A DNA stretch of 64,000 nt, taken from the NCBI RefSeq assembly GCF_006345805.1, contig NW_021833256.1, positions 1 through 64,000 on the forward strand, read 5' to 3'. The stretch is from Octopus sinensis (lineage: Eukaryota). Position numbers and translations under genes: made by a program. Positions 3,656-64,000 of the stretch are shown one piece after another; positions within the stretch are counted from its first letter, which is position 1, and each line of letters begins with the position of its first letter. The notes beneath the pieces were generated by a model that was not told the DNA's origin, searched no databases, and was given only the letters and a program-made list of their open reading frames with translations.

Positions 3656-4447
3656 TGAATGGAAGAAATGGAGTTGAACGAAGATTGTACAGAATCCTTT
3701 TATTACATTCTACACATGTTTCAAAGGCCACATCTTTCCATTTCAAACAATATATATATATATATATAGTTGTGGGGCTGTTGCCAGTGCCACCTGGCTG
3801 GCACACGTGTTGGTGGCACGTAATAAGTACCATCCAAATGTGGTCAATGCCAGTTTCTCCTCCAACAAGCTCCTGTGTCGGTGGCATGTAAAAAGCACCC
3901 ACTACACTCTTGGAGTGGTTGGCATTAGGAAGAGCATCCCACTGTAGAAACCTTGGCAGATCAGATTGGAGCCTGGCACAACCTACTGGCTTGCCAGTCC
4001 CAAGTCAAACCATCCAACCTATGCCAGCATGGAAAACAGACATTTAAATGGTGATGATGATGATATATATATGTATGCGTGTATATATGTGTGTTTGCGT
4101 GTGTATATATATATATATATATAAGAGAGGGACACACAAACAATCACTGCTTTTACACAGTTCCGCTTACCAAATTACACTCACCGGGTATTGGTCAACC
4201 TAGAGTTGCAGTAGAAGGTATCACAGTGCGAGGTTGGACCCTGAACCCCGTGGTTGTAAAGCAAACTTCTTAAACACACAGCCCATGCCTGTTTGCATGT
4301 TTGCTGGATTTGAACTCAAGATGTATCAGTTGGTAGACCAATCAATACATCAATAGCTTACCTTGAATACTGCTCTCTTTTTTCTTCCACTGAGAGAAAA
4401 AAGAGAAAAAGTAGTTCTCTTTCCTGAAGTACATAGATTTTTCCTTA

Positions 4448-5800: not shown

Positions 5801-6818
5801 ATAGGTAAAATTATAAACAGGGCAAAATTTAGCCAATTCTCCGCAGACTGAAAAAAATGATGAACAACCTTAATCAATTTTCAAACCTTATTGGGTTCTC
5901 ATCAGAGGTGTCTACATCATTCTGACAATATATAAAGTTAGCTGAGTTAGAGGTTAAAATAACCATCTAAGGGATAGAAGGTGCAGGTGGCACGTAAAAA
6001 GCACCCACTACACTCACGGAGTGGTTGGCTTTAGGAAGGGCATCCAGCTGTAGAAACATTGCCAGATTAGACTGGAGCCTGGTGCAGCCTTCTGGCTTCC
6101 CAGAACCCCGGTCGAACCGTCCAACCCATGCTAGCATGGAGAACGGACGTTAAACGATGATGATGATGATGATGATTACACTACTGGTATATTACCTATG
6201 TTTAACCATGGGCATACATATGCAAGCATATTATGCTCATAAATTATAGGTGAAGACAAGGATGAACATGATGTAAGTCAATTGTTGTTCATCAGTATTT
6301 CTCCATTTTCTGTCTACTTTATATATATATATTCATATTATTTTGCTTCAGTCATTTGACTGTGGCCATGCTGGGGCACTGTCTTTTGTCGAGCAAACTG
6401 ACCCCAGAACTTATTCTTTGTAAGCCCACTACTTATTCTATCGGTCTCTTCTGCTGAACCACTAAGTTATGGGGGGGGGGCATAAACACACCAGCATCAG
6501 TTGTCAAGCGTTGTTGGGAGGACAGACACAGAAACACACACACACACACATGACAGGTTTCTTTCACTTTCTGTCTACCAAATCCACTTACAAGGCTATA
6601 GTAGAAGACACTTGCCCAAGGTGCCACACAGTGGGACTGAACCCAAAACCATGTGGTTGGGAAGCAAGCTTCTTACCACATGACCACGACTGTGCCTCTA
6701 TCTGTATGTATGCATCTATATATATATATACATATGTATCTCTATCAATTTATAGATATAGATAGGTAGAGTATGAGAATACATGTGCAACACACACACA
6801 CACATATACACACACATA

Positions 6819-11970: not shown

Positions 11971-13716
11971 TCTTTTACTTGTTTCAGTCATTTGATTGTG
12001 GCCATGCAGGAGCACTACCTTTAGTTGAGCAAATCAACCCCAGGACTTATTCTTTGTAAGCCTAGTACTTATTCTGTTGGTCTCTTTTGCTGAACTGCTA
12101 AGTTACGGGGACATAAACACACCAGCATCAGTTGTCAAGCGATGTTGGGGGGACAAATACAGACACACAAACACACACATATATATATACATATACACGA
12201 TGGGCTTCTTTTCAGTTTCCGTCTACCAAATCCACTCACAAGGCTTTGGTCGGCCCGAGGCTATAGTAGAAGACACTTGCCCAAGGTGCCACGCAGTGGG
12301 ACTGAACCCGGAACTATGTGGTTCATAAGCAAGCTACTTACCACACAGCCACTCCCGTGCCTATAATCATTTTCATGTCAAAACAAATTTTTTTGTTCCA
12401 TGGACAATTATATCTCATTTGAAAGTTTTGGATGTGAACTTCCTTCTCATATACTTTTGATCAAAATCTGACACTTACATATCAGGAAAGGTCCCCTCAA
12501 TCACCCTTATAAAGTGTATGGCTCAAGAACACAACACACAGCCCGGTCTGGGAATCAAACTCATAACCTCATAATTGTAAGCCTGATGCCCTAACCACTC
12601 ACGTTCGTCCTGCCCATTTTTGCTCTTGACTGCTGAACAGTAACTCTTATTCTAGTTCAGTGCACTGGAGCACTACTACCTGATTTGTGTTGAAAATGAT
12701 ACGACCATGAAAAGGACTTTTTTGTTTTATTTTGATATAAAAATCAATAAGGACATTTTTTGTTTTATTTTGATATGAAAATCGATGGAGGTAGGTCAGA
12801 TAATTGTTATGAAATATATTAAGTGAAAATTTTATCGTTAATTTTCACTTTGAAAAGAACATGTTTTCTTCAAGATTTTTATACCATAAGAAAGAATAAT
12901 TTTCCTCAAATTCAGTACAGCCATTGATGATTCTGACCACGATATTTCACGGAAGCACTAAGTCAATATAAAGAGGCTGCCGTGACTGTTTGCATAGCAT
13001 TAAAGTGTATTGACACTGCTTGTCAAAACCTAGTTTGACCAGTAGACTCTGTCATCATCTTTGTTTAACATTCATTTTCCATGCTGGCATGGGTTGGACA
13101 GTTTGACTGAGGATTGGCAAGCCAGAAGGCCGCACCAGGCTCGAACCTGAACTGGCAATGTTTCTACAGCTGGATGCCCTTCCTAACGCCAACCACTCTC
13201 AGAGTGTAGTGGAAGCTTTTTACATGCCACCAGCATGGGAGCCAGTTAGATGGCATTGGCCACATTTGGATGGTGCTTTTTGTATGCTACCAGCACAGGA
13301 GCCAGTCAGGGTGGGGGGCTGGCATTGACCACATTCGGATGGAGCTTTTTATGAAAAGGTGTGTGACTCAAAGGAGATTTCACTATTGTTTCTAGCAACA
13401 TCCCATGACTACCCTCCTCATTTCTCTACCCCACCCCATCCCAGGGACCAAGCAAGTTGTGTGTGTATATAAGAAAAAAATTATTTACAAACAACAAAGT
13501 ATTCTTTTATTTGTTTTAATCATTTGACTGCAGCCATGCTGGAGCACCTCCTTTAGTCAAACAAATCAATCCCAGGACTTATTCTTTGTAAGCCTAGTAC
13601 TTATTCTATCGGTATCTTTTGCCGAATCGCTAAGTTACAGGGACGTAAACACACCAACATGGGTTGTCAAGTGATGGTGGGGAGACAAACACAGACACAC
13701 AAACTTATACATACAT

Positions 13717-17003: not shown

Positions 17004-18356
17004 TTAATTACATCTTTTTTATAAGTAATTCACAAAATGTGACTTTTCACTCCAGATGTACATATATTTCCTGTATATGTGTGTGTATATACACACAAGT
17101 GGAGGCGCAATGGCCCAGTGGTTAGGGCAGTGGACTCACGGTCGTAGGATCACGGTTTCGATTCCTGGACCGGGCGTTGTGAGTGTTTATTGAACGAAAA
17201 CACCTAAAAGCTCCACGACGCTCCGGCAGGGGGTGGTGATCCCTGCTGTACTCTTTCACCACTCTTTCTTCTGTTGGCCTGCTCGCTTAGCCAGTGGGGT
17301 GGCGTCATTTGAAGGCTAAAACAATGCAAATGCATTGTGACCAGCGATGTGTAACAACATCTGATGGTCTGGTCGGTCACGTGATCACGTGATATACACA
17401 CATATATATATATATATATTATATGTTCAGCCAGCTAGGCTATCTGAAACTTCGAAGTCACTGTCGACAACATTCTTGTATAAGAATAATACATATATAT
17501 TGTTATATTTTAGGATGGTCTTTTTTTTTTATTTTTGTTTCTCATCCCAAAATATAACAATGTTTCAACACACGATTTCACATCGGGAATCTTGCAAAAC
17601 AAATACACACACACAAACAGGCTTGTTTTTCAGTTTCTGCCTATCAAGTCCACACGTAAGGTATAGTAGAAGACTCTTGCCCAAGGTGCTGTGCAGTGAG
17701 ATCGAACCCAAGACCACACAGCTGGGCAGCAAGCTCCTTAACCATACAGCCATGCCTGCGCCTCTGTCTTAATAATAAAGATATTTATTCACATCATATA
17801 AACATAGACACATTGCCAGCCTGCCTCTCTCGGTCTTTGTATTTCTTCAAGAAGGTACTCCAGTCTAGACAAGTGCTATTAAAGAGCTTGTGTACATCTC
17901 TTTTGTTGTTTGCCAAATATAATGTCTACATTGTCAAATTAAAATGATTCACTCATTTATTTATTTATTATTACCATTTTTATTTATTTGTTTATTTGCC
18001 ATTCTGCCGTTTTTGCCATTCTATAATTCAATTTGTTGTTGTTGTTGTCAGAACGTTCTGATATTCTGTTGATTCTGTTATTCTTTAAACATTGACAAAG
18101 GAAGAATACTTACAACTATATTATTCAACTATTTTCTGATTCTGGCTGCAGCCTTCTACCACTCCTCTCTCCCTCTCAATATCTATCTATTTCTACCTCT
18201 CATGTGTGTGTATATATATGCATATGTGTATTGTGTATTTTTATATATACGTGTGTGTGTATTGAGTATATCTATAAGTATGTGTGTGAGTGAATGTGTG
18301 TGTATATATATATGCGTATGTATATGTGTGTGTGTATGTATATGTGTGTGTTTATA

Positions 18357-18406
<50 letters not shown>

Positions 18407-18940
18407 ATGTGTGTGTTTATATATATTTATTTATATATATATATATGTGTGTGTGTGCATTGTGTACATATATATGTGTATGTATGTGTATTTATATAAT
18501 TTTAGTCTTTGCTCTCTCTCTCTCTCTCTCCCACTTATTTCTTTCAATTTTTCTGTGTTTCTATCTCTCTTCCACCTTTCTTGTCTTTCTTTTCTCTCTT
18601 CTCCCTTGTCTTCCTTCTCTCACTCTTCCCTCCCCCTCTCTCTATAGTCAAATCATTGCTGCCACCTCTTTCTTGCTCTCCATACCATCTTCATCCCCAC
18701 ATCTCTCTACCAATCCCTCTTCGGTTACTTTGGTTACTAGATAAACCATTGTGGCCTCTCTCTATTATAACCGAATCCGTCTACCTTTGGAGGTCGATGT
18801 GTATATATGATGTCTCTTGATATGTGTCAGTCTCTTTTCAGGTGTGTGAGAGAGAAAGAATGATCATGTATGTATGTTGTTTATGCGACATAATCATTTA
18901 TAAATGCATTTCCTCTCAAAGTGCCGGTCCCTAACTACAG

Positions 18941-19371
18941 AGGGAAACCTGTGGAAGAGATAGACCCAAGAAGACATGGAACAAGGTGGTGAAGCATGAT
19001 CTTTGGACACTGGATCTCATGGAGGCAATGACAAGAGATGGAGGCTGTTGGTAATTTGCTGTGCTTGAGAAGACTTATCAAGCCAAGTGGAATGGTAGTT
19101 GTGGCTGGTGCCAGTGACACATGAAAGGCACCCGTGCAGGTGGCACATAAAAACCATCTGTGTCAGTGACATGTAAAAGGCACCTGTGCTGGTGACACAT
19201 AAGAGGTACCCTCTACACTCTGTGGAGTGGTTGGCATTAGGAAGGGCATCCAACTGTAGAAAGCATGCCAAATTAGATTGGAACCTGGTGCAGCCTTCCA
19301 GCTTACTAATTCTAGCCAAACTATCTAACCCATGCCAACATGGAAAATGGATGCTAGATAATGATGATGAT
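18941..19371 (+). mobile_element. RTE-clade LINE 3' end (ORF2 C-terminus plus 3'UTR with (GAT)n tail). UTR-only copies at 3780-4065, 5985-6175, 13060-13350(-), 25540-25860(-), 30465-30690(-), 34800-35005, 43800-44195, 49900-50340(-), 55620-55842(-)
   Basis: Translation TCGRDRPKKTWNKVVKHDLWTLDLMEAMTRD..W*FAVLEKT is the typical RTE GRP..TW terminus and runs into gagtggttggcattaggaagggcatccagctgtag...gatgatgat. Confidence 0.75.
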
Positions 19372-19689
19372 ATATGTATTCACACACATCTATATGTACC
19401 ATCATCATTTTTGCTTGCATGGAGCAGACAGAGTTCATGGAGACAGATTTTCTACAGCTGGATGCCCTCCCTGAAACCAACCTTCACTTGCTTCCAAATA
19501 AAGTATTTTTACCATGGCCAGACATGTTTTACACGGGAGACTGAAAACAAACAACATCGCTTGTTTGACAGCAACATTTGTTTACAACCATCAGATGATG
19601 TCAAAACAAGGGTCTCACACACACACAAACATCAATTCAGTTTGGGTATTAACCATATAGTTGGCTTTAGAAAGCCCCTGTACAAGTAT

Positions 19690-19935
19690 CAGCTGTCAGA
19701 CATAATTTGGCTGATCATATTGAAGATATATCGGGATATCTTTGAATACTTGTTGTGGCGGACACCCCCAAGTGAGAAGTGGGCTGTTCCACTACTGATA
19801 AATACTGGATAGACACAGCAAGCAGGGTCAGTCAGCGAGGTACACCATATGGGCCAGTCACGCAGATGATGAAGTTATGTCGTCATAATGCAGGACATAT
19901 CAATGGCGATGAAGATACCTCCCACTATATAACGG
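19690..19935 (+). pseudogene. Possible Ty3/gypsy pol relic (pre-RT linker)
   Basis: VGCSTTDKYWIDTASRVSQRGTPYGPV...GHI...TSHY loosely fits the G.T....H.IDT...P..QRPY...M...G.I..S.SPY pattern; contains stops. Confidence 0.35.
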
Positions 19936-25506: not shown

Positions 25507-26494
25507 ATATATATATATATATACACATATATCATCATCATCATTGTTTGACGTCCGTTTTCCATGCTAGCATGGGTTGGATGGTTTGGCTGAGGACTAG
25601 CAAGCCAGTAGGCTGTGCCAGGCTCCAATCTGATCTGGCTGTGTTTCTACAACTGGATGCCCTTCCTAATGCCAATCACTCTGAGAGAGTGTAGTGGGTG
25701 ATTTTTACATGCCACCGGCACAGGGGCTAGAGGGGGCTGGCAAACAGCCATGATCAGTTGATGCTTTTTACTTGTCACCGACACGGACGCCAGTCAGGCA
25801 GCGCTGGCTTCAGCCATGTTCTGATGGTGCTTTTTATGTGCCACTGGCACGGGGGTGCTTATGTATTTTATTATCAAGTGCAAGCATACTTATTTGCATC
25901 ACTATCACCATATCAGCTCACCTGGGTTCCTCTTATAGCCACTCTTTATCCTGCGGACTCAGTCTTTTGATAAAGGGGATGTAAACACACCAGCATCGGT
26001 TGTCAAGTGATGGTTGGGGGACAAACACAGACATATATACGACAGGCTTCTTTCAGTTTCCGTCTACCAAATCCACTCGCAAGGCTTTGGTCGGCCTGAG
26101 GCTATAGTAGAAAACACTTGCCCAAGGTGCCACACAGTGGGACTGAACCTGGAACCATGTGGTTAGTAAGCAAGCTACTTACCACACAGCCACTCCTGTA
26201 CTTATTACTCTTTTTTTCTTCTATTTAGCAGAATCAGCAGAGTGACCCAAGGTCTGAGTTTCATGATTCGAGCTAATACATGAAAATCTCAGCCCTTGAG
26301 TAATTTTGTTCCAGCTAAATACTAATAAAAACATCTATCTATATAGATATATGTATGTATGTGCATGCATATGCGTGTATGTATATGAATGTATATATGT
26401 AAGTATATATGTATATATATGTATGTATATATACATGTGTATATGTACATATAAATGTGTGTGTATATATATATATATAACACACATACATATG

Positions 26495-30015: not shown

Positions 30016-31578
30016 GAGTATACATTAATAAGCAAAAGATACACACTACCATATTTATTAGTACAAACCTGCTATCTTAAACATAGCTGTATTGACATTT
30101 TTTTTTTTTGTATATGGTGAATTACTAGTGCATATATGCAGGCAGTGTAAATGTGCTACCTAGTGGCATTTCTTCAAGCTCTTTATGTTCTGAGATCTAA
30201 TCCCACCAGGATCAACTGTGCCTTTCATCCTTTCAGCAGGGGTCAATAAAATAAAGTACCAATTAAGTACCAATAAAGTACTGGGGTCAGTGCTAATGAC
30301 TTATTCCCTCTCCCACTAAAATTGTTGGCCTTGTGCCAAAATTTGAAACAATTATTATTAATAAAGGGTGTCCATAAATTTCCAAAACTGGACTGTCTCT
30401 TCCAGTCCACCAGTTGCATTAAGAAACTCTGAAACACTCAACACCTCCCCAATAGGACAGTGCATCATCATCATCATTGTTTAACGTCCGTTTTCCGCGC
30501 TAGCATGGGTTGGACGGTTTGACCGGGGTCTGGGAAGCCAGGAGGCTGCACCAGGCTCCAGTCTGATCTGGCAGTTTTTGTACAGCTGGATGCCCTTCCT
30601 AACGCCAACCACTCCGCGAGTGTAATGGGTGCTTTTTACGTGCCAGGGGAGTCTGGCACTGGCCACGATCGGTTGGTGCTTTTATCGTGCCGGAAAATCA
30701 CAGATGGTTGCAAGCAGTGCAACTGTGGTACAACAAATTCTTTTCTGAATTTTTCAAATTGTTAAGGTTATCAAGGAAGATCCTATACACACGTGTCTCC
30801 AACAACTTTAGCCACATTTTTTAATTCAGTACTTGACTGTGTGGTAAGATGCTTGCTTCCCAACCACATGGTTCCGGGTTCAGTCTTATTGTGTGGCACC
30901 TTGGGGAAGTGCCTTTTGCTATAGCCTCAGGCCAGCCAAAGCCTTGTGAGTGGATTTGACAGACGGAAACCGAAAGAAGCCCATTGTATATACATGTATG
31001 AATATCTGTGCTTGTGTGTGTGTGTCTTTGTTTGTTCCTTCACTAACACTTGACAATTGGTGTTGGTGTGTTTACAGACCTGTAACTTAGCAGTTCAACA
31101 AAAGAGACCAATAGGCCAAGTACCAGGCTTTAAAAAAAGTACTGAGCTTGATTCATCTGACTAAAAAAATTCTTCAAGCAGTGCCCCAGCATGGTCGCAG
31201 TCAAATGACTGAAACAAGTAAAAGACAAAAGATACCACACATGGGCATGTTTATAGAAATCAACAAGAAAATTACAGCAAAGCTGTGTGATGGTGATGTC
31301 AGACATGCAGTGCAGACCATCATATAACTTGTTTATGCCTCTCTTCTGTTTTATTTTGACACGCACATTGTGTTTTTATTCTTCTCTTCCATTTTAAAAA
31401 ATTCAGTATAGGCACAGGAGTTGCTGTGTGGTAAGTAGCTTGCTTACCAACCACATGGTTCCAGGTTCAGTCCCACTGCGTGGCACCTTGGCCACGTGTC
31501 TTCTACTATAGCCTTGGGCCGACCAAAGCCTTGTGAGTGGATTTGGTAGACAGATTTGGAAACTGAAAGAAGCCTGTC

Positions 31579-43106: not shown

Positions 43107-45790
43107 GTGTAGAATGTAGATTGGGTTATAGTATTCAATGGTGATTGTATGGAACAGTGGTTCTTAACTGGGGTCCATATAAGATTTTGTTAAAGTTACC
43201 TCCGCCAATGTCCCCTACCTTCTCAAAGGTTCTTTGTCTTGCAAGTTACTTGGTGTCCCTGCCAGTGTTGGTGCCACGTAAAAAGCATCCCATCCACACT
43301 GTAAAGCAGTTGGTGTTTAGAATGGCATCCAGCTGTAAAAACCTTGCCAAAACTGACCTCACCTGTACTGGTGCCAGGGAAAAAGCACTCAGTCCACTCT
43401 GCTGAGTGGTTGGTGTTAAGAAGGGCATCCAGCTGTAAAAACTGTGCCAAAACAGACAAGTACTACCGGTCGAGAGTTCCGCATACCAGAAAGCAGCAAG
43501 TGCATGGGGTCATCAGGAGAGAATGAGCACCATTCCAGGGCCTACCTGTCAACGGCATCAATGCGCACCAGCTTCACTGATATGAGGCCCCACTTGCTAG
43601 ATCAACTGGTTATCAAATAAAGCTCAATATTCTTCCAGCCATCGCTCATAATCTTCTGCTTGGCTAGCTCCTGTCAAACCATCCAACTCATGCCAGCATG
43701 GAAAGCAGACATTAAACAGTGATGATGAAATTGGTTATACTCCTAAAATACACAAAATATTTTAATAGTTCTTTTTATTATACATCAAATTCAATGACTA
43801 GCACCTGTGCCAGTGGAGCTCTAAGAGCACCATCCAAGCATGATCATTGCCAGAGCAGCTGACTGGTTTCTGTGCCGGTGGCACGTAAAAATACCGGTGG
43901 CACGTGAAAAAACATTTGAGCGAGGTCATTGCCAGTGCCACTGGACTGGCTCCTGTGCAGGTGTCATGTCAAAAACACCATTTGAGCATGGCCATTGCCA
44001 GTACCGCTTGACTGGCCCTCATGCCGGTGACACGTAAAAGTACCCACTACACTCTTGGAATGGTTGGCATTAGGAAGGGCATCCAGCTGTAGAAACTCTG
44101 CCAGATGGAGCCTGGTGCAGCCATCTGGTTCGCCAGTCCTGTCAAACCATCCAACCCATGCTAGCATGGAAAGTGGATGTTAAACGATGATGATGAGTTC
44201 CTAATAATATTTAGTTTCAAATTTTGATACAAGGCCAGCAAGTTCAGAAGAAGGGGTTAAGTTGATTACATTAGCCCCAGTGCTCAACTGTTATTTTATC
44301 GATCCCAAAAGGGCGAAAGGCAAAGTCAACCTTAGCATAATTTGAATAAAGAATGTCTAAGAAGGACAAAATGCCATTAAACATTTTGCCCAACATGCTA
44401 ACGATTCCACCACCTCATTGTCTTACAATTCTTAATTACACTTAATTATAAAACTACGGCAGGATATTTTATTAACCAGGAGGTGGGGTAGTAGAGTAAA
44501 ATAGCCAAAAAATGGTTGAGAACCTCTGGATGTAGTTTGGGTTATGGTACTGAGTGGTGATTATAAAGAATATGTATTGTGCGAGTCGTGTTGTAATATT
44601 AGTTCTAAGCTTTTGGACAAGGCCAGCAACTTCGAGAGAAGGGGGTAAATCAATTATATCGACCCCAGTGGTCAACTGGCACTTATTTTATCAACCCTGA
44701 AAGGATGAAAGGCACAGTCGACCTTGGTGTAATTTGAACTCAGAACGTTAAAGACAATGCCAGTGGTTCTCCCACCTCGCTGCCTTACAATTCCTAATAA
44801 TATTCAATTAGAAAACTACAATAGGGTATTTTTTTAACATGAGGGGGTGCGGAGGCCAGTAGAGTGAAACAGAAATCAAAAGGGGTCCATTGGCAAAAAA
44901 TGGTTTGGAACCATTGGATGTAGAATGTAGATTGGGTTATAGTAATGAATACTGATTGTATAGAACATGTACTGTACGAGTCATATTGTAATATTGGGAG
45001 GTAATGGTATAGCATGTATTGGAATATAATATTTTAAAGACTTTATTCTGTACCTAACAAGGCTATTTTATAGATTGTGTTGCAAAGTTGTGAGCCCTGG
45101 TACGCATTTTTTTGTTTTTATTTAGTGTTTCCATTCATGTTCTTCTTTATCAAATCCATTACATTACCATGTTGTCGGTGCCATTTTACTCTCAAACCTT
45201 ACATCTTGCTTTTATTTCAAGGGCTTTGTACTTGGTTCCGGAAGGAAATGAAATAAAAAAAAACATCAATGTTTTTGCTCAAAAGGAATCACGATGTCTA
45301 TCACAATGTATAGGTGTTTTTATGTTTGTTTTGGGTTTTTTTTTGTTTGTACATATACATAATATATGTATGTATGCATGTATATATGTATGTATGTATG
45401 TATATATACATATATATATATTTATACATACATATATATATATATATATTATACATACATACACATATATATATATATATATAATATATATATATATATG
45501 TGTGTGTGTGTGAGGATCTATTTTTTTTTTACCTTTTCTATCTTTGATTGTGGTACCAGAATGGCTTCTTTTGGATGTGCTTGCCATTCTGAGAGTCATT
45601 AATTCCAGAGTAGCATAGTTGTGTCATTACCACATGCTGTAGTTGGTACTTGTGTGCTTATATTTGTATATAACTAGGTATGTATGTGTGTGTGTATACA
45701 TGTATGTGTGGTGGTGTATGTATGTATATATGAATATATATGTATGTAGGTGAGTGTGTGCATACATGTATATATGTTTGTGTGTGTGTG

Positions 45791-48130: not shown

Positions 48131-48637
48131 ATTCATAGAGAACCATTTACTCAGTGGCCATAACCACTCTCCCCGCTCACCCCACCAAATCATGCCAGTG
48201 TCTATATTCTTTCTTTGCGGCTAAGAATGGTTTGGCCAATTATATATATTTATTCTGACTGCATAGTCTACAGTTTGATGCTAACCGCTCATTTTATTTT
48301 GGTCGTTTTTGATCTAGCCGTGGCATTGATCTTACGGCAGCTAAAATCAGACCTTCCATTCCTGGTCTTTTATTTCAAAGCTTTTTCAGCAATTGTCTGT
48401 CTTTCATATTGGATTACTTCCTCTTTGTTCAGTTTTGCTGTATTTTACTAACTACCAAGAAGTCTCCCTCTCTCTCCTCTCTCTCTCAGCTATTGGCGTG
48501 AGGTGAGGGCAGGTTCCATTTTGGTCTTTGAGTTGGTTTTATTTCTAACTTTCCTGTCATTTACATCCTTATCTATACCTTTATACATCAGTGCACAATG
48601 ATTCGACTTTTTGGTTTGTTGTTTCCTTATATATATG

Positions 48638-49365: not shown

Positions 49366-49635
49366 GTGTCTCCAGTTTGCCATGCCGTGACTGGGAGGGG
49401 AACATCGTGTCCAACGGTGACGAATACACACCCGATAAAGATGAGCCGTGTCGGTCTTGTATGTGCCAGAACGGTCTACACATCATGTGTAACATGGTCC
49501 TTTGTTCTCCTCCAGCCTGCATGAAGATCAAAACTGTTGAGAATGCTTGCTGTGACTTCCGATGTTTGAATGGCGGACCAGAGAATACACATTCCAACAG
49601 AACTGGTGATAAAAATGGCATCGGGAATGTAAAAC
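49366..49635 (+). CDS. DGCR2: VWC (von Willebrand factor type C) domain exon of DGCR2/IDD-like protein
   Basis: Acceptor tctttctcttccag at 49365 and donor gtgagc at 49636; 270 nt, phase 1-1. Translation CRDWEGNIVSNGDEYTPDKDEPCRSCMCQNGLHIMCNMVLCSPPACMKIKTVENACCDFRCL has VWC cysteine spacing (CxxCxC...C...C...CC..C) and resembles the DGCR2 VWC as I recall it. NRT sequon in the stalk. Confidence 0.9.
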
Positions 49636-50629
49636 GTGAGCCTTTTTTCCATTATCATTTTTCTTTTATTTTAAGGCTGTGACCTGACAGAATCGTTAGC
49701 ACACCAGGTAAAATGCTTAGCAGCATTTCATTCATCTTAATGTTCTAGGTTCAAATTCCACTGAGGTCGACTTTGCCTTTTCTTGTCGAATGAAGTGACA
49801 CCCTCTCACACATAACTGTCAGTGGATTGGACAAGCCTTAGTTGAGGTTAATCTGTGAGGGTGTTAGTCTTGTTATTGATTCTGCATTGGAGTCAGCATC
49901 ATCATCATCGTTTAACGTCCGCTTTCCATGCTAGCATGGGTTGGAATTGTTTGACTGAGGTCTGGTGAACCAGATGGCTGTACCAGACCCAATCTGATCT
50001 GGCAGAGTTTCTACAGCTGGATGCCCTTCCTAACACCAACCACTCCAAAAGTGTAGTGGGTGCTTTTACGTGCCACCGGCACGAGGGCCAGTCGGGCGGT
50101 ATTGGCAACGGCCATGCTCAAATGGTGCTTTTTATATGCCACCTGCACAGGAGCCAGTCCAGGGGCACTAGCAACGACCTTGCTCGAATGTTTTTTCACA
50201 TGCCACCAGCACAAGTGCCAGTAAGGCAACGCAGGTAACGATCACGCTCAAATGGTGTTTTTTTACGTGCCATCGGTACGGAGGCCAGCTTGTTGCTCTG
50301 GCAACGATCTCACTCGTATGGTACTCTTAGCGCTTCACTAGCACGGATGCCAGTCATTGAATTTGATTTCGATTCTTGGAGTCTTGGATTGTTATTGTGC
50401 AAATGGTTATAATAAGATAACCATTGCTTATTGTTATACGGTTATATTTGATACTGTGATATATTGTCACACGCACACACATGCTATATATTGTCACTGA
50501 AGATATAACACCTTTCAATCCTTTCGGGGGTCAATAAATTAAGCATCAATGAAACACTGGGGTCGATGTAATCATCTTACTCCTCCCCCAAAATTTCAGG
50601 CCTTGTATCTTTAGTAGAAAAGATTATAA

Positions 50630-54944: not shown

Positions 54945-55842
54945 TCATTATTATTATTACTATTATTATCATTGTATAGGTGGCAAGCTGGCAGAATCAT
55001 TAGCACACTGGCCAAAATGTTAAGTGCATTTTGTCTGTCGTTATGTTCTGAGTTAAAATTCTGCTCAGGTCAACTTTGCCTTTCATCCTTTTGGGGTCGA
55101 TGTAATGGACTAGCCCCATCCCACAAAATCTCGTGCTTTGTACCTGTAGTAGAAAGGATGATTATTATTATTATTATCATCATTATCATTACTACCTCTG
55201 TCTTAGTGAAGGCAGAGGTATTGTTTTTCAGTCGTGTTTGTTTGTTTGTGTGTTTGTCTGTGGACAAGATATCTCAAGTCAAGTTTATTTCAGATATTCT
55301 CATTTTAAAAATCATCTCCAGGTAATCGTTGAGAGGACATCCTCCTCCTCCAAATTCCATGCCTTGTGCCTATAGTAGAAAGGATTATTATTATTGCAGA
55401 ATAATAAATGTGCCAGGCAAAATGCTTAGTGACATTTCATCTGTCTCTATGTTCCGAGTTCAAATTCCACCAAGGTCGACTTTCCCTTTAATCCTTTCAG
55501 GGTTGATAAATTAAGTACCAGTGAAACACTGGGGGTCAATTATTATTAATTAAAAAAATAAGACGGGTACATTAGATAATATGGACTATGTGTGTGTGTG
55601 TATGTGTGTGTGTGTGTCTGTCATCATCATCATCATCATTTAATGTCCGCTTTCCATGCTAGCATGGGTTGGATGATTTGACTGAGGACTGGCGAACCAG
55701 ATGGCTGCACCAGACTCCAATCTTAATATGGCAGAGTTTCTACAGCTAGATGCCCGTCCTAACGCCAACCTCTCCGAGAGTGTAGTGGGTGCTTTTACGT
55801 GCCACCGGCACGAGGGCCAGTCAGGCGGTACTGGCAACAGCC

Positions 55843-55877
<35 letters not shown>

Positions 55878-56726
55878 CATACATACATACATACAGACAA
55901 ATACACATAGTTGACAGGATGATCACAAAGGGGTCACCTATAATCATAGATCAGGCATTAAGCAACAACAAAGGAACTATTACATGGTCAATTAATCAGC
56001 TAGATACAGCAGCCAAATTACCTTTAAATCAGAAATTGAACAAAAAAAAAAAACTAAGGACACACTGGATAACATAGTTCTCTGTGTATGAAATAAACTG
56101 CAGGAACAACAAATAATTTCTCTGATCTTTCCAGTTATCTTTTACCTTTTTTTTTCTTGTTTCAGGCATTGGACTGTGGTCATGCTTGGGCACCACCTTG
56201 ACAGGTTTAGTCAAACAAATCGACCCCAGTACTTTTTTTTTTAAAGTGTGGTGCCTATTTTATCAGTCTCTTTTGCTGCTGAACTGCTATGTTGTAGGGA
56301 TATAAACAAACCAACACTGAATGTCAAGTAGTGATGGGACACACACACAACAGGCGTCTTTCAGCTTCCATCTATCAAATCCACTTGCAAGACTTTGGTT
56401 GGCCTGGGGTGGGGTGGGGTAGGGGCTACAGTAGAAGACACTTGCCCAAGGTGTCGCAGAGTGGGACTGAACCCAAGACCACATGGTTGAAAAGTAAGGT
56501 TTTTTTTAACCACGCAAGCACATTGAAATTTAATTATGCAATTTCGTTTCCGTTTTACTTTAATCTGAGGTGGTGATGGAGTGGGGAGAGGGAAGAGAAG
56601 AGAGGGGGGATGTGAAATTTACCGAAAAGAAACTACCTGCATTATTTTCTATGTGTGTGTGTGTTTACGTATTTACTTAATTTCGTTCTCACTTGTCTTC
56701 TCTTTCTCTCTCTCTCTCTCTTTCAG

Positions 56727-56861
56727 GTCGTAGTGATGATGACATCGCAGACCAAGGATTACGACTGGCTGCCAGCACGGTGACCTCATTTCTCGTACTA
56801 GCTCTGCTGCTTTTTATGGTCCATCGCCTCTGTCAACGTAGACATCTCATACAAATGAGAA
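56727..56861 (+). CDS. DGCR2: Transmembrane exon of DGCR2/IDD-like protein
   Basis: Acceptor (tc)n tttcag at 56726 and donor gtaagt at 56862; 135 nt, phase 1-1. [44 protein letters not shown] closely matches the recalled vertebrate DGCR2 TM segment [29 protein letters not shown]. Confidence 0.92.
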
Positions 56862-60193: not shown

Positions 60194-60569
60194 GAATCTA
60201 ACGGTTTTTGTGTTTTTAAATGGCTTATAAATACCTTCCAAGATGCAGTTGTTGTATCTATATATATATCTGTGTAGTGTGTATGTGTATGTATATATAT
60301 ATGTTATGCATATATGTATCACCATGCTTATCATATATTTTGTGTATATATATATATATATATTTGTAAATATACTGTAAAAATGAGGTCAATGAGTCTG
60401 GAATATTTTATAATCTGAATGATTCTTCTTTAATATTTATAATCTCATTAAAAGTGAAAGTTGAATTTCTTATTTCTTACTTAATCTCTTAATCCCTCTC
60501 TCTCTCTCTTTCTCTCTCCCCCGTCCCTTCACTCTATTTTTTATTCATTTCTTCTCTTAATTTTTGCAG

Positions 60570-63500
60570 GGTTGAATGCACCTCGAAACCACCAAGATGA
60601 TGACAACGATAACAACCCTTTCTCTCAGGATGCCTTTTCAATTGGTATGCCTTGCCCACCCCCTTACGAGGGTCCCCCTCCACCGTACACATTACCGAAA
60701 CCATTCACCTATATACAGCCTTGTGAGGCACCGCCCCCTTACGAAGAAGTGCAGTACCAGATGGCTGGTCATAACCCTGCCTTTTCTGACACTCTCAGCC
60801 CTACTAATCGCACAATAAACCCAAATGATACCAGTGGCCAGGAAGCCGAGTCTAACCCGTCCATGCACGGCCTCAATTTAGAAGGTGTCAGTTGTGAGTT
60901 TCCGTCGAATGTAGACAATGACGACGACAGCAGTCTACACGAGACTACACCGAAAACTCCGTTTGGCACCGACGAAAATCAGTTCACCTCTCCATTTACC
61001 AGGACCGGCCATTCTCCATCAATAGCACGTCCCTTCAGTACGTTCTTCGGTTCTTGTACATCAGCTGAAATTTCTGACGGTCGTCAGGCGCGTAATTCCT
61101 GCGGAAGCATTGCGGCACGGGCTGAACGGATCCGTTCGTGTTTGTTTCCCAGTGGAAAGGAACACCAGGACGGCATCGCTTTGGGTCTCACAAGGCAGCA
61201 AGCAGCAGCAGCAGCTATATCTCTGAGAGAAACCGGTGAAAAATCATCTGTAACAGCAGCATCAACATCAACATCAAAAGCAGATAAATTTGCACCTTGG
61301 TATATCAAGCGCTCTGAAAGTATCGAAATTCGACGAGAAAGCCACAGTCCACGTAATTCATATTGTTTTCGAAACAATTACATTCCTTCTGATACCAGTG
61401 ATTCATCAGAATCTGAGCAAGAATCCGCCGATGTTTCTAGTTCTTGGCTCAAGTCTAGTAACAGCGCCGTGGGATTTTCTCTGGGAACCAATAACCAACA
61501 ACCGCAACAATCAACAGCTGCTGGGTCTGCTGTTTCCTCTTTCAAACCGAGTGTTTCAAAATCTAGTGACTGCTATACTGGTTGGGAAAAACAGCCAGCA
61601 CACGAGAATTTAACTGGTGATTGTGTTAACGAGTCCAAAAGCACAGCAAATGCAGAAGTTACCAAATCAGCTGTTCCTGGAAAGCCGGTTCGGATAAGTT
61701 ATATTGACTCTCCAAATCAGCAATCTGTCAGTCACGGAACCAGCAGTAACAAAACCGATGTTGTCAGCGAACAAGGTGAAAAATCTAATATTTCCAAATT
61801 GAATTCAGCTAATCAGTTAGCTAACTCTTCTTTTGTTCAAAGCCATGATTTTGGTGTGACATCATCAGCTCTTCAGATTCGAAATAGTCTGCCTCCCCTG
61901 GAATTGAAACCCTTGCAACCAGACCTCCAGAAATCCGAGATGGCTACTCAGACGAGTAAAATTACTCCTCCAAGTGTCCTGTCCTTGACTTCTGGAGCCA
62001 GTGGAAGCGGCTTACTTTCTGTTGAACATGCTGAGGATAGCTTATCAGAACGCGGTTTCCGTGACTTACATCACCCTGCAACTATACTGAGTGGCCGACT
62101 GCAGAGCCCTGGCACCCCTGTATCCTCGGGGTCATCTCCGTCGAGGAATAGCATGGGTACATTGCAAGACCGTTCCAATTCACTGACTTCAGATATCTCT
62201 TTGTTCTCAATTTGTTCGGAGACTGGTGAGAAGAAGAGACCGAAAAACAACTCCTCTTCGTGCACCTCTACTCCTTCCACTATCACCAGCAGCAACACAA
62301 TCGAAGCTACACACAACGCTGGCAACAGCCACCTTATCAAGAATGAAAACCCTTACGCTGACCCCTTTCATACAAAAACCATTAAAGATGGTGGTGATAG
62401 TGGTAACATAACGAACATGGTGAATCCGGTCACAGCTGGTGCTACTCATTTGCCAATCCAACGACACGAGCCCTTGACCACCGCGAGCTTAGTGTCCAAT
62501 ATTCTTAAGCGTTATTCAGACATTCCTCGACAATCAGTAGAACATGACGAAAACAGCTACTCGAAGCCTTCATCCTCAGCTCCTCCGACTTCTCTTCCTC
62601 CTTCAACATCCACGTCTTCATCACTGATTGCCCAGCATCAACACTTCAAACCACAAAGCAGCCACATTCATACCTCTTCTGCATCCAGTTCTAGTGCTCA
62701 CCATCAAGCTAACAGCCACATTCCCCATCACTCTCACCATTCCAGTTGGAGCTGTGATCCATCAAGTATTACAACGGCTGTCAACAGCGCTACAGGCAGG
62801 CTGATCAAAAGAAGTGATTGCACATTAGCTCAATCATATCCTCGCAAATCTGAGATTCGTTCCTTGGATAATCGCAAGTCAATCGACGACATTATACGAA
62901 CTATTGACATCACACCTGTTCTGCAGAGCATTGCGAAGCCTTTAGATATTCTACGAGATAGCACTCATTTAGGGTCTGCATCAGGTTCAAAAGAATTAGC
63001 CCCGACCTTTTCTTCAGGAGCTACATCGAGGACTAACAGCTCTTCTACCACCAGCAAAACTATGACTGCAACTAACGTTACGAATTCCAGTCTCACAAAC
63101 TTCAGTAAGTTTGGTCCACTTAACGCCAGCCCCAAGGACTGTCTCTCAAGCAGCTTTCCATTTACTGATAAAACCTCACCCCCACCTCCACTGCCAGTGT
63201 ACCCTAAACCCAAAGCAAGTCCTGCAGACCGTAAGAAACGACATTCCCTTGGCAGTATGTCTAAAGCTAGCAAAAGATCGGGCCACAAGTCAGCAAACCA
63301 TCAAGAAAACACCAACTGCAAGAGTGCCTCAACCACTTCAAGTAGTCTTTTGAACAGTATACAAAACTCTTTCAACATGTCGACTACTCAAGCTATGAAA
63401 TCTTCTGACTCCTCACAGACCCACGATAGCAATTCCCATAGTAACGCTAATAAAATATGTGAGCCTTGTTACAAGCAGTATGGTTACGTCGAGAGGCTGA

Positions 63501-64000
63501 CCGCATCGCACAGTTGCGGCCATAAAAAAGAACACGGCAAAAGTGTTACGGATCACTTCAAAGACAGAAATGCTGAGAAAGAAGGTGAATCAAACAAACT
63601 GTCTCCTTCTATGATGAAATACCTAACTGCTAGTCCCAAATCCTCCAACACAGGCCAATTATCATACCCAACAGATAATGCTCACAGCACCGTGAAGCTA
63701 AACGGTGCCGGAGCTGGTCAAAATAGTAGTTCTTCCGGCTACAAAGTTAAAAAAATGTCACATCCTAGAATTTCTCCAGATCACAAAACCAAATCTAGCT
63801 CTTCAGCTACTCATAAATCTACAAGTGGGAGCAGCTGTACTACAACTGCAAGTGTGGAAGTCCATCAACCGCCCAGCGGAGTGATACCAAAGAAGAGACA
63901 CGCTCGCAGTAAAGATAAAAATCGGAAATCATACCCTGGTGCTAGCCCAGATACAACGCCAAGAGAGACCAAAATCGTTTCCAGTCCTTGGATGGCTCCA
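60570..64000 (+). CDS. DGCR2: Giant cytoplasmic-tail exon of DGCR2/IDD-like protein (3' end beyond window)
   Basis: Acceptor tttttgcag at 60569, phase 1. Manual translation from 60572 is stop-free to 64000 (1143 codons): LNAPRNHQDDDNDNNPFSQDAFSIGMPCPPPYEGPPPPYTLPK...APPPYEEV...SPWMAP. The segment is GC-richer and free of microsatellites. It is absent from the ORF track, presumably because no stop falls in the window. Confidence 0.9.

What the first reader, a model, noticed from the sequence alone, without database searches (positions are those of the whole stretch)
60570..64000. DGCR2-like receptor with a cytoplasmic tail of at least 1140 aa in one exon
Seen: an uninterrupted frame of 1143 codons, Ser/Thr/Asn-rich and probably disordered, in a locus otherwise saturated with TEs and microsatellites, implying constraint. 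Established: human DGCR2 is about 550 aa in total with a tail of roughly 180 aa. Inference: this is a lineage-specific roughly six-fold tail expansion that may act as a signalling or condensate scaffold in a neural adhesion-type receptor. The ORF track misses it entirely.
Basis: partly seen in the sequence, partly recalled or inferred. Interest (0 to 1): 0.7.

Follow-up and report, generated by a model that had tools for sequence, protein, structure and literature searches.

The report
Long-tailed DGCR2-related receptor, octopus copy
The long open frame is real and is the protein-coding last exon of an octopus membrane receptor related to vertebrate DGCR2, but limpets and an annelid worm have a comparably long tail, laid out the same way in one exon, so it is an old and already-annotated gene design, not an octopus invention.

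Summary
Observation confirmed. A stop-free frame runs from 60485 to the window end (1172 codons). From the acceptor ttgcag|GG at 60570 it encodes 1143 codons in the window plus 66 beyond it. It is the last of four exons of a database gene model (1348/1390 aa): signal peptide (outside the window), one VWC-type Cys-rich exon (49366-49635), a TM exon (56727-56861) and a 1221-aa cytoplasmic tail. Against a related octopus the exon has dN/dS 0.11, only whole-codon indels and 95.8% identity, versus 84.4% in the adjoining intron, so all of it is coding. The tail is Ser-rich, non-repetitive and predicted disordered.

Interpretation partly supported. The Cys-rich/TM/PPxY core is homologous to vertebrate DGCR2 (E 8e-15), and the C-terminus (-SSYV) is PDZ-ligand-like as in DGCR2, but there is no LDLa or C-type lectin domain. 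Patella (limpet, tail 846 aa, also ending -LSSYV) and Owenia (annelid, tail 998 aa) share the short conserved islands in the same order and carry the whole tail in one exon. Octopus is only 1.2-1.45 times longer, and the excess lies between two islands.

Most likely function (inferred): a disordered multi-motif docking tail. Modest interest.

The parts
49366..49635 (+). Exon encoding the only extracellular domain: a Cys-rich VWC-type module (90 codons, phase 1 at both ends). Acceptor ttccag|GT, donor AAAC|gtgagc.
   Evidence: tblastn of models P0001/P0003. Sequence read directly. Aligns with the VWFC region of vertebrate DGCR2 with the cysteines conserved. Precomputed Pfam hit PF23334 VWC2L_2nd, flagged weak.
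56727..56861 (+). Exon encoding the transmembrane helix and the basic stop-transfer segment (GLRLAASTVTSFLVLALLLFMVHRLCQRRHLIQMR; 45 codons). Acceptor tttcag|GT, donor AGAA|gtaagt.
   Evidence: The TM sequence is nearly identical across the family. The equivalent exon is 46 codons in Patella and 45 in Owenia.
60570..64000 (+). Tail exon: the in-window part of the last coding exon. It holds 2 bases completing an Arg codon plus 1143 codons, and continues 66 codons beyond the window to a stop after ...SQLSSYV. It encodes the remaining ~1209 aa of the 1221-aa cytoplasmic tail.
   Evidence: Genomic contig L001 from a related octopus is collinear from the same acceptor to the stop with no intron. 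dN/dS 0.109. Exon and intron divergence compared.
60656..60742 (+). PPxY block: three PPPY motifs (PCPPPYEGPPPPYTLPKP...EAPPPYEE) at +43, +50 and +68 from the membrane. These are putative WW-domain ligands.
   Evidence: Motif positions. Two of the three are conserved in every family member from vertebrates to molluscs. Human DGCR2 is listed among PY-bearing putative WWP1 interactors (PMC13133773).
61255..61256 (+). In-frame internal acceptor (gtaacag|CA) used by gene models of another octopus species (P0002, P0004). Using it would skip the first 228 tail codons, including the PPxY block.
   Evidence: Whether it is a real isoform is unknown. The skipped part is itself under strong purifying selection (omega 0.04-0.09 in the three 100-codon bins that cover it).
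61304..61363 (+). Island A: IKRSESIEIRRESHSPRNSY. It is conserved in Owenia and three unnamed long-tailed relatives and fits a hydrophobic-x-R-x-x-S-hydrophobic kinase consensus.
   Evidence: The kinase reading is from general knowledge and was not tested.
62171..62245 (+). Island C: RSNSLTSDISLFSICSETGEKKRPK. This is the best-conserved tail island, and CSETGE is invariant in all six long-tailed lineages aligned.
   Evidence: It is the only tail-specific island (beyond the juxtamembrane region) that is significant pairwise against Patella, Owenia, P0040 and P0044 (E 2e-7 to 4e-8).
62837..62947 (+). Island seen only in cephalopod-type relatives (YPRKSEIRSLDNRKSIDDIIRTIDITPVLQSIAKPLD). It contains two of the three short helices predicted anywhere in the tail.
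   Evidence: 81% identical to P0039/L004. Helices at tail residues 772-785 at low confidence. Absent from Patella and Owenia in alignment A1.
63473..63493 (+). Island D: KQYGYVE (consensus K.YG[FY][IV]D).
   Evidence: Present in Patella, Owenia, P0040, P0044, P0039 and also Capitella.
63890..63937 (+). Island E: basic stretch KKRHARSKDKNRKSYP (Patella has KKRQSYP).

Best explanation
Window 60570-64000 is the in-window part of the last exon of an ordinary, already-modelled octopus gene. The gene encodes a type I single-pass membrane protein with a short ectodomain made of one VWC-type Cys-rich module, a highly conserved TM helix and a 1221-aa intrinsically disordered cytoplasmic tail.

The protein belongs to a long-tailed branch of the DGCR2/IDD-related family that is shared by at least cephalopods, patellogastropods and annelids. 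The tail is not a recent octopus expansion. It is an old design in which short conserved docking or regulatory motifs lie in a fixed order, separated by fast-evolving Ser-rich linkers. The order is: three PPxY motifs next to the membrane, island A (IKRSxSIEI..SPRNSY), island C (..FS[IV]CSETGExKRP), island D (K.YG[FY][IV]D), a basic KxRKSYP stretch, and a C-terminal -S-Y-V.

Shown here: exon structure, coding status and purifying selection over the whole exon, homology of the core to DGCR2, collinear islands and the same four-exon layout in Patella and Owenia, and absence of repeats or internal duplication.

Inferred: the tail acts as a multivalent adaptor. The PPxY motifs would recruit WW-domain proteins such as NEDD4-family ubiquitin ligases, controlling surface level or endocytosis. 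The C-terminal S-x-V would tether the receptor to PDZ scaffolds of the Dlg/PSD-95 type, as shown experimentally for the -TVV end of human DGCR2. The central Ser-rich islands would be phosphorylation-regulated docking sites.

The octopus tail is the longest seen. The excess over other species (about 160-240 aa) lies almost entirely between islands C and D. That interval holds a His/Ser-rich stretch and an island seen only in cephalopod-type relatives.
For: ORF and splice sites. Database models identical to the window. Constraint against an orthologous genomic contig: dS 0.147, dN 0.016, omega 0.109; omega is at most 0.15 in 11 of 12 bins, the remaining bin being 0.38 (codons 801-900); substitutions by codon position 23/18/104; indels of 6, 1 and 1 codons. 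Exon 95.8% identical with indels of 3, 3 and 18 nt; intron flank 84.4% identical with indels of 1, 2, 2, 12 and 27 nt. Family: E 2e-52 to 1e-15 for invertebrate 'DGCR2/IDD-like' or VWFC proteins, about 1e-10 for vertebrate DGCR2; E 8e-15, 35% over 204 aa. Long-tailed relatives: exhaustive search, sequences, names (Patella vulgata, P. caerulea, Owenia fusiformis), alignment, motif table. Same exon layout: Patella, Owenia. The same Mpv17/PMP22 upstream neighbour in Patella and Owenia. A more distant cephalopod-like relative (L004) has its frame open to the contig edge and ends -LSSYV. Disorder: mean pLDDT 33 with no residue at or above 70; S+T+N+P+G+Q is 50% and hydrophobic residues 18%. No tandem or internal repeats. 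Function by analogy: DGCR2 -TVV binds PSD-95 and deletion abolishes binding (PMC10362570); DGCR2 is in a WWP1 two-hybrid list of PY-bearing proteins (PMC13133773).
Against: No transcript evidence could be examined, so the exon junctions rest on gene models, canonical splice sites and homology across the junction (octopus MRRLNA against Owenia MRRLNAE). Models from another octopus species use an internal acceptor at 61256 instead. All binding functions are inferred from motifs. Owenia's tail ends in -ESTK at a genuine stop, so the PDZ-type C-terminus is not universal in the long-tailed set. Outside the islands the tails are not alignable pairwise, so homology of the linkers is inferred from order and spacing. 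Single-sequence AlphaFold gives low confidence for many proteins, so pLDDT 33 is only weak evidence for disorder. Bivalve, mite, insect and vertebrate members have short tails without islands A, C or D. Without an outgroup, the evidence does not prove whether long or short is ancestral for the whole family.
Confidence: 0.75

Rival explanations
1. One reading: a cephalopod-specific, roughly six-fold expansion of the DGCR2 tail that created a new signalling or condensate scaffold.
For: The octopus tail (1221 aa) is 6.8 times the vertebrate DGCR2 tail (177-179 aa) and 3-6 times the bivalve, mite and insect tails. Octopus has the longest tail in the family. The C-to-D interval is 422 aa against 178-265 aa elsewhere and holds an island seen only in cephalopod-type relatives.
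Against: Patella (846-851 aa) and Owenia (998 aa) have tails 70-82% as long, with the same islands in the same order and the same single tail exon, and Patella has the same -LSSYV end. The spacings TM-to-A (241-276 aa) and D-to-end (222-237 aa) are the same in octopus as in the others. Only about 160-240 aa could be cephalopod-specific.
Confidence: 0.08
2. Only part of the exon is coding in the mature mRNA. The main isoform uses the internal acceptor at 61256 and skips the first 228 tail codons with the PPxY block, as in models P0002 and P0004 of another octopus species. Alternatively both isoforms exist.
For: Two models from another species join the TM exon or another 5' exon at or within a few bases of 61256 (P0002 at 61256, P0004 about 3 nt upstream), and an AG lies in the right phase there.
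Against: The skipped segment is as constrained as the rest (omega 0.04-0.09 in the three 100-codon bins that cover it). It encodes the PPxY block, which is conserved family-wide and is collinear with the TM exon in every homologue. The 60570 acceptor and its polypyrimidine tract are conserved in L001. The P0002 model has an implausible N-terminus that skips the Cys-rich exon.
Confidence: 0.12
3. The long frame is not a functional gene part. It is a chance, repeat-derived or TE-derived open frame, or a decaying pseudogene tail.
For: The locus is rich in microsatellites and SINE-like repeats. The sequence is low in complexity in places, and Pfam finds no domain.
Against: The chance expectation is about 91 codons (maximum 259) against 1172 observed. 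dN/dS is 0.11, substitutions concentrate at third positions, and indels are triplets only. There is no tandem or internal repeat. Simple repeats are twelve-fold depleted relative to the window. Conserved islands are shared with a limpet and an annelid.
Confidence: 0.01
4. The model is a fusion of two genes: a short DGCR2-like receptor plus an unrelated downstream Ser-rich protein.
For: Many family members are short (200-570 aa), and the full-tail searches found very few relatives.
Against: The PPxY block, which belongs to the receptor, and the rest of the tail lie in one uninterrupted exon in octopus, a second octopus, Patella and Owenia. The far C-terminus carries the family-typical PDZ-type ending.
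Confidence: 0.01

Closest known systems
Vertebrate DGCR2/IDD (Sez-12), the DiGeorge critical region 2 integral membrane protein
   Same: Type I single-pass topology. A VWC-type Cys-rich module directly before the membrane. A near-identical TM and stop-transfer sequence (..RL.AS..SFL.L.LLLFMVHRL.QRR). Two PPPPY/PPPY motifs after the membrane. A C-terminal [ST]-x-V PDZ-type ending. BLASTP E 8e-15, and DGCR2 is the only vertebrate family retrieved. Human -TVV binds PSD-95 (PMC10362570).
   Different: No LDLa and no C-type lectin domain, so the ectodomain is about 100 aa instead of about 350. The tail is 1221 aa instead of 162-179 aa, and it carries islands A, C, D and E, which vertebrate DGCR2 lacks.
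Uncharacterized long-tailed DGCR2-related proteins of Patella vulgata (XP_050409061.1), Patella caerulea (KAK6189911.1 and others) and Owenia fusiformis (CAH1801820.1)
   Same: The same architecture (signal peptide, one VWC-type module, TM, PPxY block, long disordered tail). The same four-exon layout with the whole tail in the last exon. The same islands in the same order, and in Patella the same -LSSYV C-terminus.
   Different: The octopus tail is 1.2-1.45 times longer, and the excess lies between islands C and D. Island A is not recognisable in Patella. Owenia ends in -ESTK. The island IDDIIRTIDITPVLQSIAKPLD is seen only in octopus and the cephalopod-like P0039.
Short-tailed invertebrate 'DGCR2/IDD-like' or VWFC-domain proteins (Mytilus, Pinctada, Ruditapes, Haliotis, Capitella, mites, insects)
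   Same: The same VWC-only ectodomain, TM and PPxY block (E 2e-52 to 1e-15). Bivalves end in -CSVV and mites in -ISRL, both PDZ-type.
   Different: Tails are 87-406 aa and lack islands A and C. Some, such as Haliotis at 359 aa, may be truncated models.
Shisa-like / WBP1-type single-pass adaptors (Cys-rich ectodomain, TM, PY-motif tail). This is a functional analogy recalled from general knowledge.
   Same: A small Cys-rich ectodomain, a single TM and cytoplasmic PPxY motifs thought to recruit NEDD4-family ligases. SHISA4, WBP1 and DGCR2 appear together in a WWP1 two-hybrid list (PMC13133773).
   Different: No sequence relationship was detected: Pfam gave no Shisa or WBP1 hit for the core even at E up to 10. 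The Cys-rich module here is VWC-type.

Membership tests
DGCR2/IDD (vertebrate type) | LDL-receptor class A domain at the N-terminus | tested here: not met
   Absent from models P0001 and P0003 and from every invertebrate homologue (precomputed Pfam). tblastn of three vertebrate ectodomains and an LDLa regex over all six frames of the window found nothing. The signal-peptide exon lies outside the window, about 98 kb upstream, so an unmodelled exon in that intron cannot be formally excluded.
DGCR2/IDD (vertebrate type) | C-type lectin domain | tested here: not met
   Same tests as for LDLa. The only window match to the vertebrate ectodomain is the VWC exon at 49374-49475.
DGCR2/IDD (vertebrate type) | VWC-type Cys-rich domain next to the membrane | tested here: met
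   BLASTP alignment with DGCR2 residues 276-341 with the cysteines conserved. Precomputed PF23334 VWC2L_2nd, flagged weak. My own hmmscan of the core gave no VWC hit at E up to 10, so this rests on homology, not on a Pfam threshold.
DGCR2/IDD (vertebrate type) | Conserved TM and stop-transfer sequence followed by two PPxY motifs | tested here: met
   Octopus has three PPPY motifs at +43, +50 and +68; vertebrates have two at +62 and +80.
DGCR2/IDD (vertebrate type) | C-terminal class I PDZ ligand ([ST]-x-V) that binds PSD-95 | not testable with these tools
   The pattern is present (-S-Y-V), but it lies 66 codons beyond the window. Binding is shown only for human DGCR2 (PMC10362570).
DGCR2/IDD (vertebrate type) | Short cytoplasmic tail (about 180 aa) | tested here: not met
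   1221 aa against 162-179 aa.
Long-tailed lophotrochozoan DGCR2-related proteins (unnamed; Patella and Owenia type) | Collinear tail islands: PPxY block, A, C (CSETGE), D (YG[FY][IV][DE]) | tested here: met
   Island C is significant pairwise against four relatives.
Long-tailed lophotrochozoan DGCR2-related proteins (unnamed; Patella and Owenia type) | Four-exon layout: signal peptide, VWC (about 90-95 codons in octopus and Patella; not recovered in the Owenia mapping), TM (45-46 codons), whole tail in one exon | tested here: met
   Octopus, Patella, Owenia.
Long-tailed lophotrochozoan DGCR2-related proteins (unnamed; Patella and Owenia type) | Head-to-head Mpv17/PMP22-family neighbour upstream | tested here: inconclusive
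   Seen in Patella and Owenia. For octopus the gene spans 113 kb, no DNA was returned and no gene lies within the 10-kb flanks.
Shisa-like / WBP1 PY-motif adaptors | Shisa or WBP1 family domain | tested here: not met
   No such Pfam hit at E up to 10. The resemblance is functional only.

The most novel reading that the evidence does not exclude
There is an undescribed long-tailed branch of the DGCR2 family, spread across Lophotrochozoa, whose disordered tail keeps a fixed motif order and near-constant spacings (TM-to-A 241-276 aa; D-to-C-terminus 222-237 aa). Its invariant CSETGE island would be a KEAP1-type Kelch-domain ligand. One receptor tail would then couple WW-domain ligases, a Cullin3-Kelch adaptor and PDZ scaffolds. 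The cephalopod lineage would have added a further island and about 200 aa between islands C and D.
Probability: 0.12. Interest if true: 0.5.

Novelty: new variant of a known kind. Interest (0 to 1): 0.25.

Why it matters
DGCR2 is a 22q11.2-deletion and schizophrenia-risk gene whose cytoplasmic signalling is poorly understood. This work shows that invertebrates carry a stripped-down relative with only the VWC module outside the cell. In molluscs and annelids that relative has a tail of 850-1220 aa with a handful of deeply conserved short motifs, which gives a list of candidate docking sites to test. For cephalopod biology the result is mainly negative: this is not a cephalopod neural innovation. 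Only about 200 extra residues and one extra island are candidates for lineage-specific change. The gene is already modelled in public databases, so the practical gain is annotation quality. The models of another octopus species that skip the PPxY block or the Cys-rich exon look wrong or represent an untested isoform.

Tried and rejected
(1) Translating from 60570 as given produced stops. This was resolved as a phase-1 exon whose frame starts at 60572.

The exhaustive HMMER search was needed to find the relatives.

(3) Pfam on the tail gave nothing real: a sub-threshold CTD9 match at E 0.4, dismissed. Pfam on the core gave only sub-threshold noise.

(4) The last word-indexed search, with a compact profile of islands A, C and D (A2), found one 181-aa fragment. 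It did not even recover the proteins the profile was built from, so the taxonomic breadth beyond Patella, Owenia and the unnamed ENA/Logan proteins remains unknown.

(5) I hoped the Logan contigs carrying P0005 were spliced mRNA. They are genomic, with intron and acceptor present, so they give constraint evidence but no splicing evidence.

(6) Searching the paper library for the run accessions, to name the organisms behind L001 and L004, gave no paper. Searching for DGCR2 together with cephalopod, mollusc or related terms brought up no paper among those listed that mentions DGCR2.

(7) Octopus microsynteny with Mpv17/PMP22 could not be tested, because the gene range was too long for DNA retrieval.

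(8) TE or tandem-repeat origin of the tail was rejected.

(9) The other open stretches over 200 codons in the window (18073-18741 and 19177-19809) have no Pfam hits and are a microsatellite translation and a SINE-like repeat.
Full report
OBSERVATION. Translating from 60570 in frame 1 gives many stops. The frame one base further on, with codons starting at 60572, is stop-free from 60485 to the window end: 1172 codons. It is the only stop-free stretch longer than 223 codons on either strand of the 64-kb window. Position 60570 follows a textbook acceptor (polypyrimidine tract, ttttgcag|GG). The other five frames of the same 3.4 kb hold 37-93 stops each, and 2000 shuffles gave longest open runs of mean 91, maximum 259 codons. 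The ORF-listing tool omits it only because the frame runs off the window end. The composition is Ser 19.3%, Thr 8.1%, Pro 7.5%, Asn 6.3%.

THE GENE. A database protein of 1348 aa (P0001) is 100% identical to the frame. A 1390-aa model (P0003), identical in sequence, lies on a 45.6-Mb contig. Near-identical models or ORFs from other octopus sources sit in the same 90% cluster. Mapping them to the window gives three exons:
- 49366-49635: a Cys-rich module of 90 codons, ttccag|GT ... AAAC|gtgagc.
- 56727-56861: the TM helix of 45 codons, tttcag|GT ... AGAA|gtaagt.
- 60570 onward: the tail.
All three are phase 1. Joined, they read ...NVKR-RSDDD... and ...IQMR-R-LNAPRNH... exactly as in the models. 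The signal-peptide exon is not in the window. The gene spans 113 kb in assembly GCA_951406725.2, which puts that exon about 98 kb upstream of the Cys-rich exon. The tail exon continues 66 codons past the window to a stop after ...SQLSSYV. A genomic contig from a related octopus (L001) is collinear from the same acceptor to that stop with no intron. The cytoplasmic tail is 1221 aa, about 1209 of them in this one exon.

IS IT ALL CODING? L001 is 93.6% identical to window 60355-64000 at the nucleotide level. Nei-Gojobori analysis over 1137 aligned codons gives dS 0.147, dN 0.016 and omega 0.109. Omega is at most 0.15 in 11 of 12 bins (0.38 in codons 801-900). Substitutions by codon position are 23/18/104, and the indels are 6, 1 and 1 codons. 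At the nucleotide level the exon is 95.8% identical with indels of 3, 3 and 18 nt. The adjoining intron is 84.4% identical with indels of 1, 2, 2, 12 and 27 nt. The exon has almost no simple repeats (0.44% against 5.4% for the window), no tandem-repeat structure and no internal duplication. AlphaFold2 without an alignment gives mean pLDDT 33, no residue at or above 70 and only three helices of 4-6 residues. With 50% S+T+N+P+G+Q and 18% hydrophobic residues, this is consistent with intrinsic disorder, though the single-sequence model is weak evidence on its own.

FAMILY. The core (Cys-rich module, TM, PPxY block) retrieves invertebrate proteins that sources name 'integral membrane protein DGCR2/IDD-like', 'VWFC domain-containing' or uncharacterized: Haliotis, Ruditapes, Pinctada, Mytilus, Capitella, mites and insects, at E 2e-52 to 1e-15. 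It also retrieves vertebrate DGCR2 at about 1e-10, and no other vertebrate family. Pairwise against a reptile DGCR2 the alignment (E 8e-15, 35% over 204 aa) runs through the VWC cysteines, the TM helix and both PPxY motifs. The invertebrate members, octopus included, lack the LDLa and C-type lectin domains. None is in the models, and none is in the window by tblastn or regex. So 'DGCR2-like' holds for the VWC/TM/PPxY core and not for the full DGCR2 architecture. C-termini are PDZ-ligand-like in many lineages: vertebrates -NT[IV]V, bivalves -CSVV, mites -ISRL and octopus -SSYV. For human DGCR2, the -TVV end binds PSD-95 and its deletion abolishes binding (PMC10362570). DGCR2 is also listed among PY-bearing putative interactors of the NEDD4-family ligase WWP1 (PMC13133773).

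IS THE LONG TAIL LINEAGE-SPECIFIC? No. The members found have tails of 87-406 aa. An exhaustive HMMER scan of 1.84 billion representatives with the tail itself then found six further proteins:
- P0039 (E 4e-61), a C-terminal fragment from unnamed Logan runs, ending -LSSYV.
- Five weaker hits, P0040-P0044.

Cluster look-up names P0041 as Patella vulgata XP_050409061.1 (995 aa), with P. caerulea relatives of 977-1000 aa, and P0042 as Owenia fusiformis CAH1801820.1 (1146 aa). Their tails are 846-851 aa and 998 aa. Alignment and motif scans show the same short islands in the same order:
- the PPxY block;
- island A, [IV]KRSxS[IV]EI..SPRNS[YF] (not recognisable in Patella);
- island C, RSxSxTSxISxFS[VI]CSETGExKRP (CSETGE invariant);
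- island D, K.YG[FY][IV]D;
- a basic KxRKSYP stretch;
- in Patella, the identical -LSSYV end.

Only island C and the juxtamembrane region are significant pairwise, so the linkers have diverged beyond recognition.

Distances from the membrane are as follows.
- Octopus: A +259, C +562, D +984, end +1221.
- Owenia: A +241, C +663, D +928, end +998.
- Patella: C +446, D +624, end +846.
- P0040: about +261, +502, +742, +973.
- P0044: about +276, +551, +799, +1036.

TM-to-A (241-276 aa) and D-to-end (222-237 aa in four lineages) are nearly constant. The octopus excess sits in C-to-D: 422 aa against 178-265 aa. That interval holds a His/Ser-rich stretch and an island, IDDIIRTIDITPVLQSIAKPLD, shared only with P0039 (81% identity).

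The gene structure is shared as well. Patella has a signal-peptide exon, a 25-kb intron, a 95-codon Cys-rich exon, a 46-codon TM exon and the whole tail in one exon. Owenia has a 45-codon TM exon and the whole tail in one exon ending at a genuine stop. Both have an Mpv17/PMP22-family gene head-to-head upstream. In L004, which carries P0039, the frame is open to the 5' contig edge through a Gln/His-rich stretch, so that relative also has a long uninterrupted tail exon. The tails are 70-82% as long and clearly homologous in plan.

HOW IT PROBABLY WORKS. The anatomy is shown; the rest is inference from motifs. The protein would be a small-ectodomain, single-pass receptor whose disordered tail works as a multivalent adaptor:
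- The membrane-proximal PPxY motifs would bind WW-domain proteins such as NEDD4-family ligases, giving ubiquitin-dependent trafficking or turnover.
- The C-terminal S-x-V would bind PDZ scaffolds, by analogy with DGCR2 and PSD-95.
- Islands A and C fit a hydrophobic-x-R-x-x-S-hydrophobic kinase consensus (general knowledge) and may be phospho-regulated docking sites.
- The invariant ETGE inside island C resembles the high-affinity KEAP1 Kelch ligand of NRF2 (described in PMC11773481). This is a lead only.

Nothing here tests condensate formation.

RIVALS. An isoform using the internal acceptor at 61256 (models P0002 and P0004 from another octopus species) would remove the PPxY block. The skipped segment is as constrained as the rest and is collinear with the TM exon in all homologues, so at most this is a minor isoform. 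Fusion, chance and TE explanations are refuted as described above.

VERDICT. The feature is real, and it belongs to an ordinary, already-modelled gene. What remains mildly new is the recognition of a long-tailed, VWC-only branch of the DGCR2 family in molluscs and annelids, with a conserved motif order and spacing. No paper listed by the searches run here describes it. Interest 0.25.

Noticed in passing
window 19127-19395, with copies at 3767-4072, 5981-6167, 13052-13303, 25507-25727, 30467-30645, 44022-44196, 49898-50082 and 55626-55811: A dispersed SINE-like repeat of about 190-300 bp, with at least 9 copies in the window at 72-79% identity on both strands. It accounts for the 211-codon open stretch at 19177-19809 and for the similar peptide in the minus-strand ORF at 55640-55906. 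Pfam finds nothing.
   Followed up: partly
window 18073-18741: The 223-codon open stretch here is a translation of TG/TA-type microsatellite and low-complexity DNA (CVCICVCV..., YIYIYI...). It is not a gene, and Pfam finds nothing.
   Followed up: yes
window 61255/61256: Gene models of another octopus species (P0002, P0004) enter the tail exon at or within a few bases of an internal acceptor (gtaacag|CA). That would produce a receptor without its PPxY block. P0002 also replaces the Cys-rich exon with odd upstream exons at 44945-44998 and 48316-48441. This is either a mis-annotation or an untested isoform.
   Followed up: partly
L006 1-718 (Patella) and L007 1-1732 (Owenia): In both the limpet and the annelid, the gene's immediate upstream neighbour on the opposite strand is an Mpv17/PMP22-family gene (PF04117). 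This is conserved head-to-head microsynteny across phyla. It could not be checked in octopus.
   Followed up: partly
tail exon as a whole; see island coordinates under 'parts': Linker lengths are conserved although linker sequences are not. Membrane to island A is 241-276 aa in four lineages, and island D to the C-terminus is 222-237 aa in four lineages. This hints at a length constraint on parts of the disordered tail.
   Followed up: no
L004 1-480, corresponding to window ~62590-62800: Where octopus has a His/Ser-rich stretch (HIHTSSASSSSAHHQANSHIPHHSHHSS), the more distant cephalopod-like relative has a much longer poly-Gln/His repeat (QQQQHQQPQAQHLHTQSQ...) followed by a Gly run. This segment evolves by repeat expansion, and it probably broke the short-read assembly there.
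   Followed up: no
window 61195-61215: A (GCA)6.7 microsatellite inside the coding exon encodes the AAAAA run in ...TRQQAAAAAISL.... It is the only simple repeat of 12 nt or more in the exon.
   Followed up: no
upstream of window position 1: The gene spans 113 kb in a chromosome-level assembly (GCA_951406725.2), while the distance from the Cys-rich exon to the stop is only about 14.8 kb. Intron 1 is therefore about 98 kb, and the signal-peptide exon lies about 49 kb beyond the window start. The older 1348-aa model (P0001) therefore lacks a signal peptide and starts inside intron sequence.
   Followed up: partly
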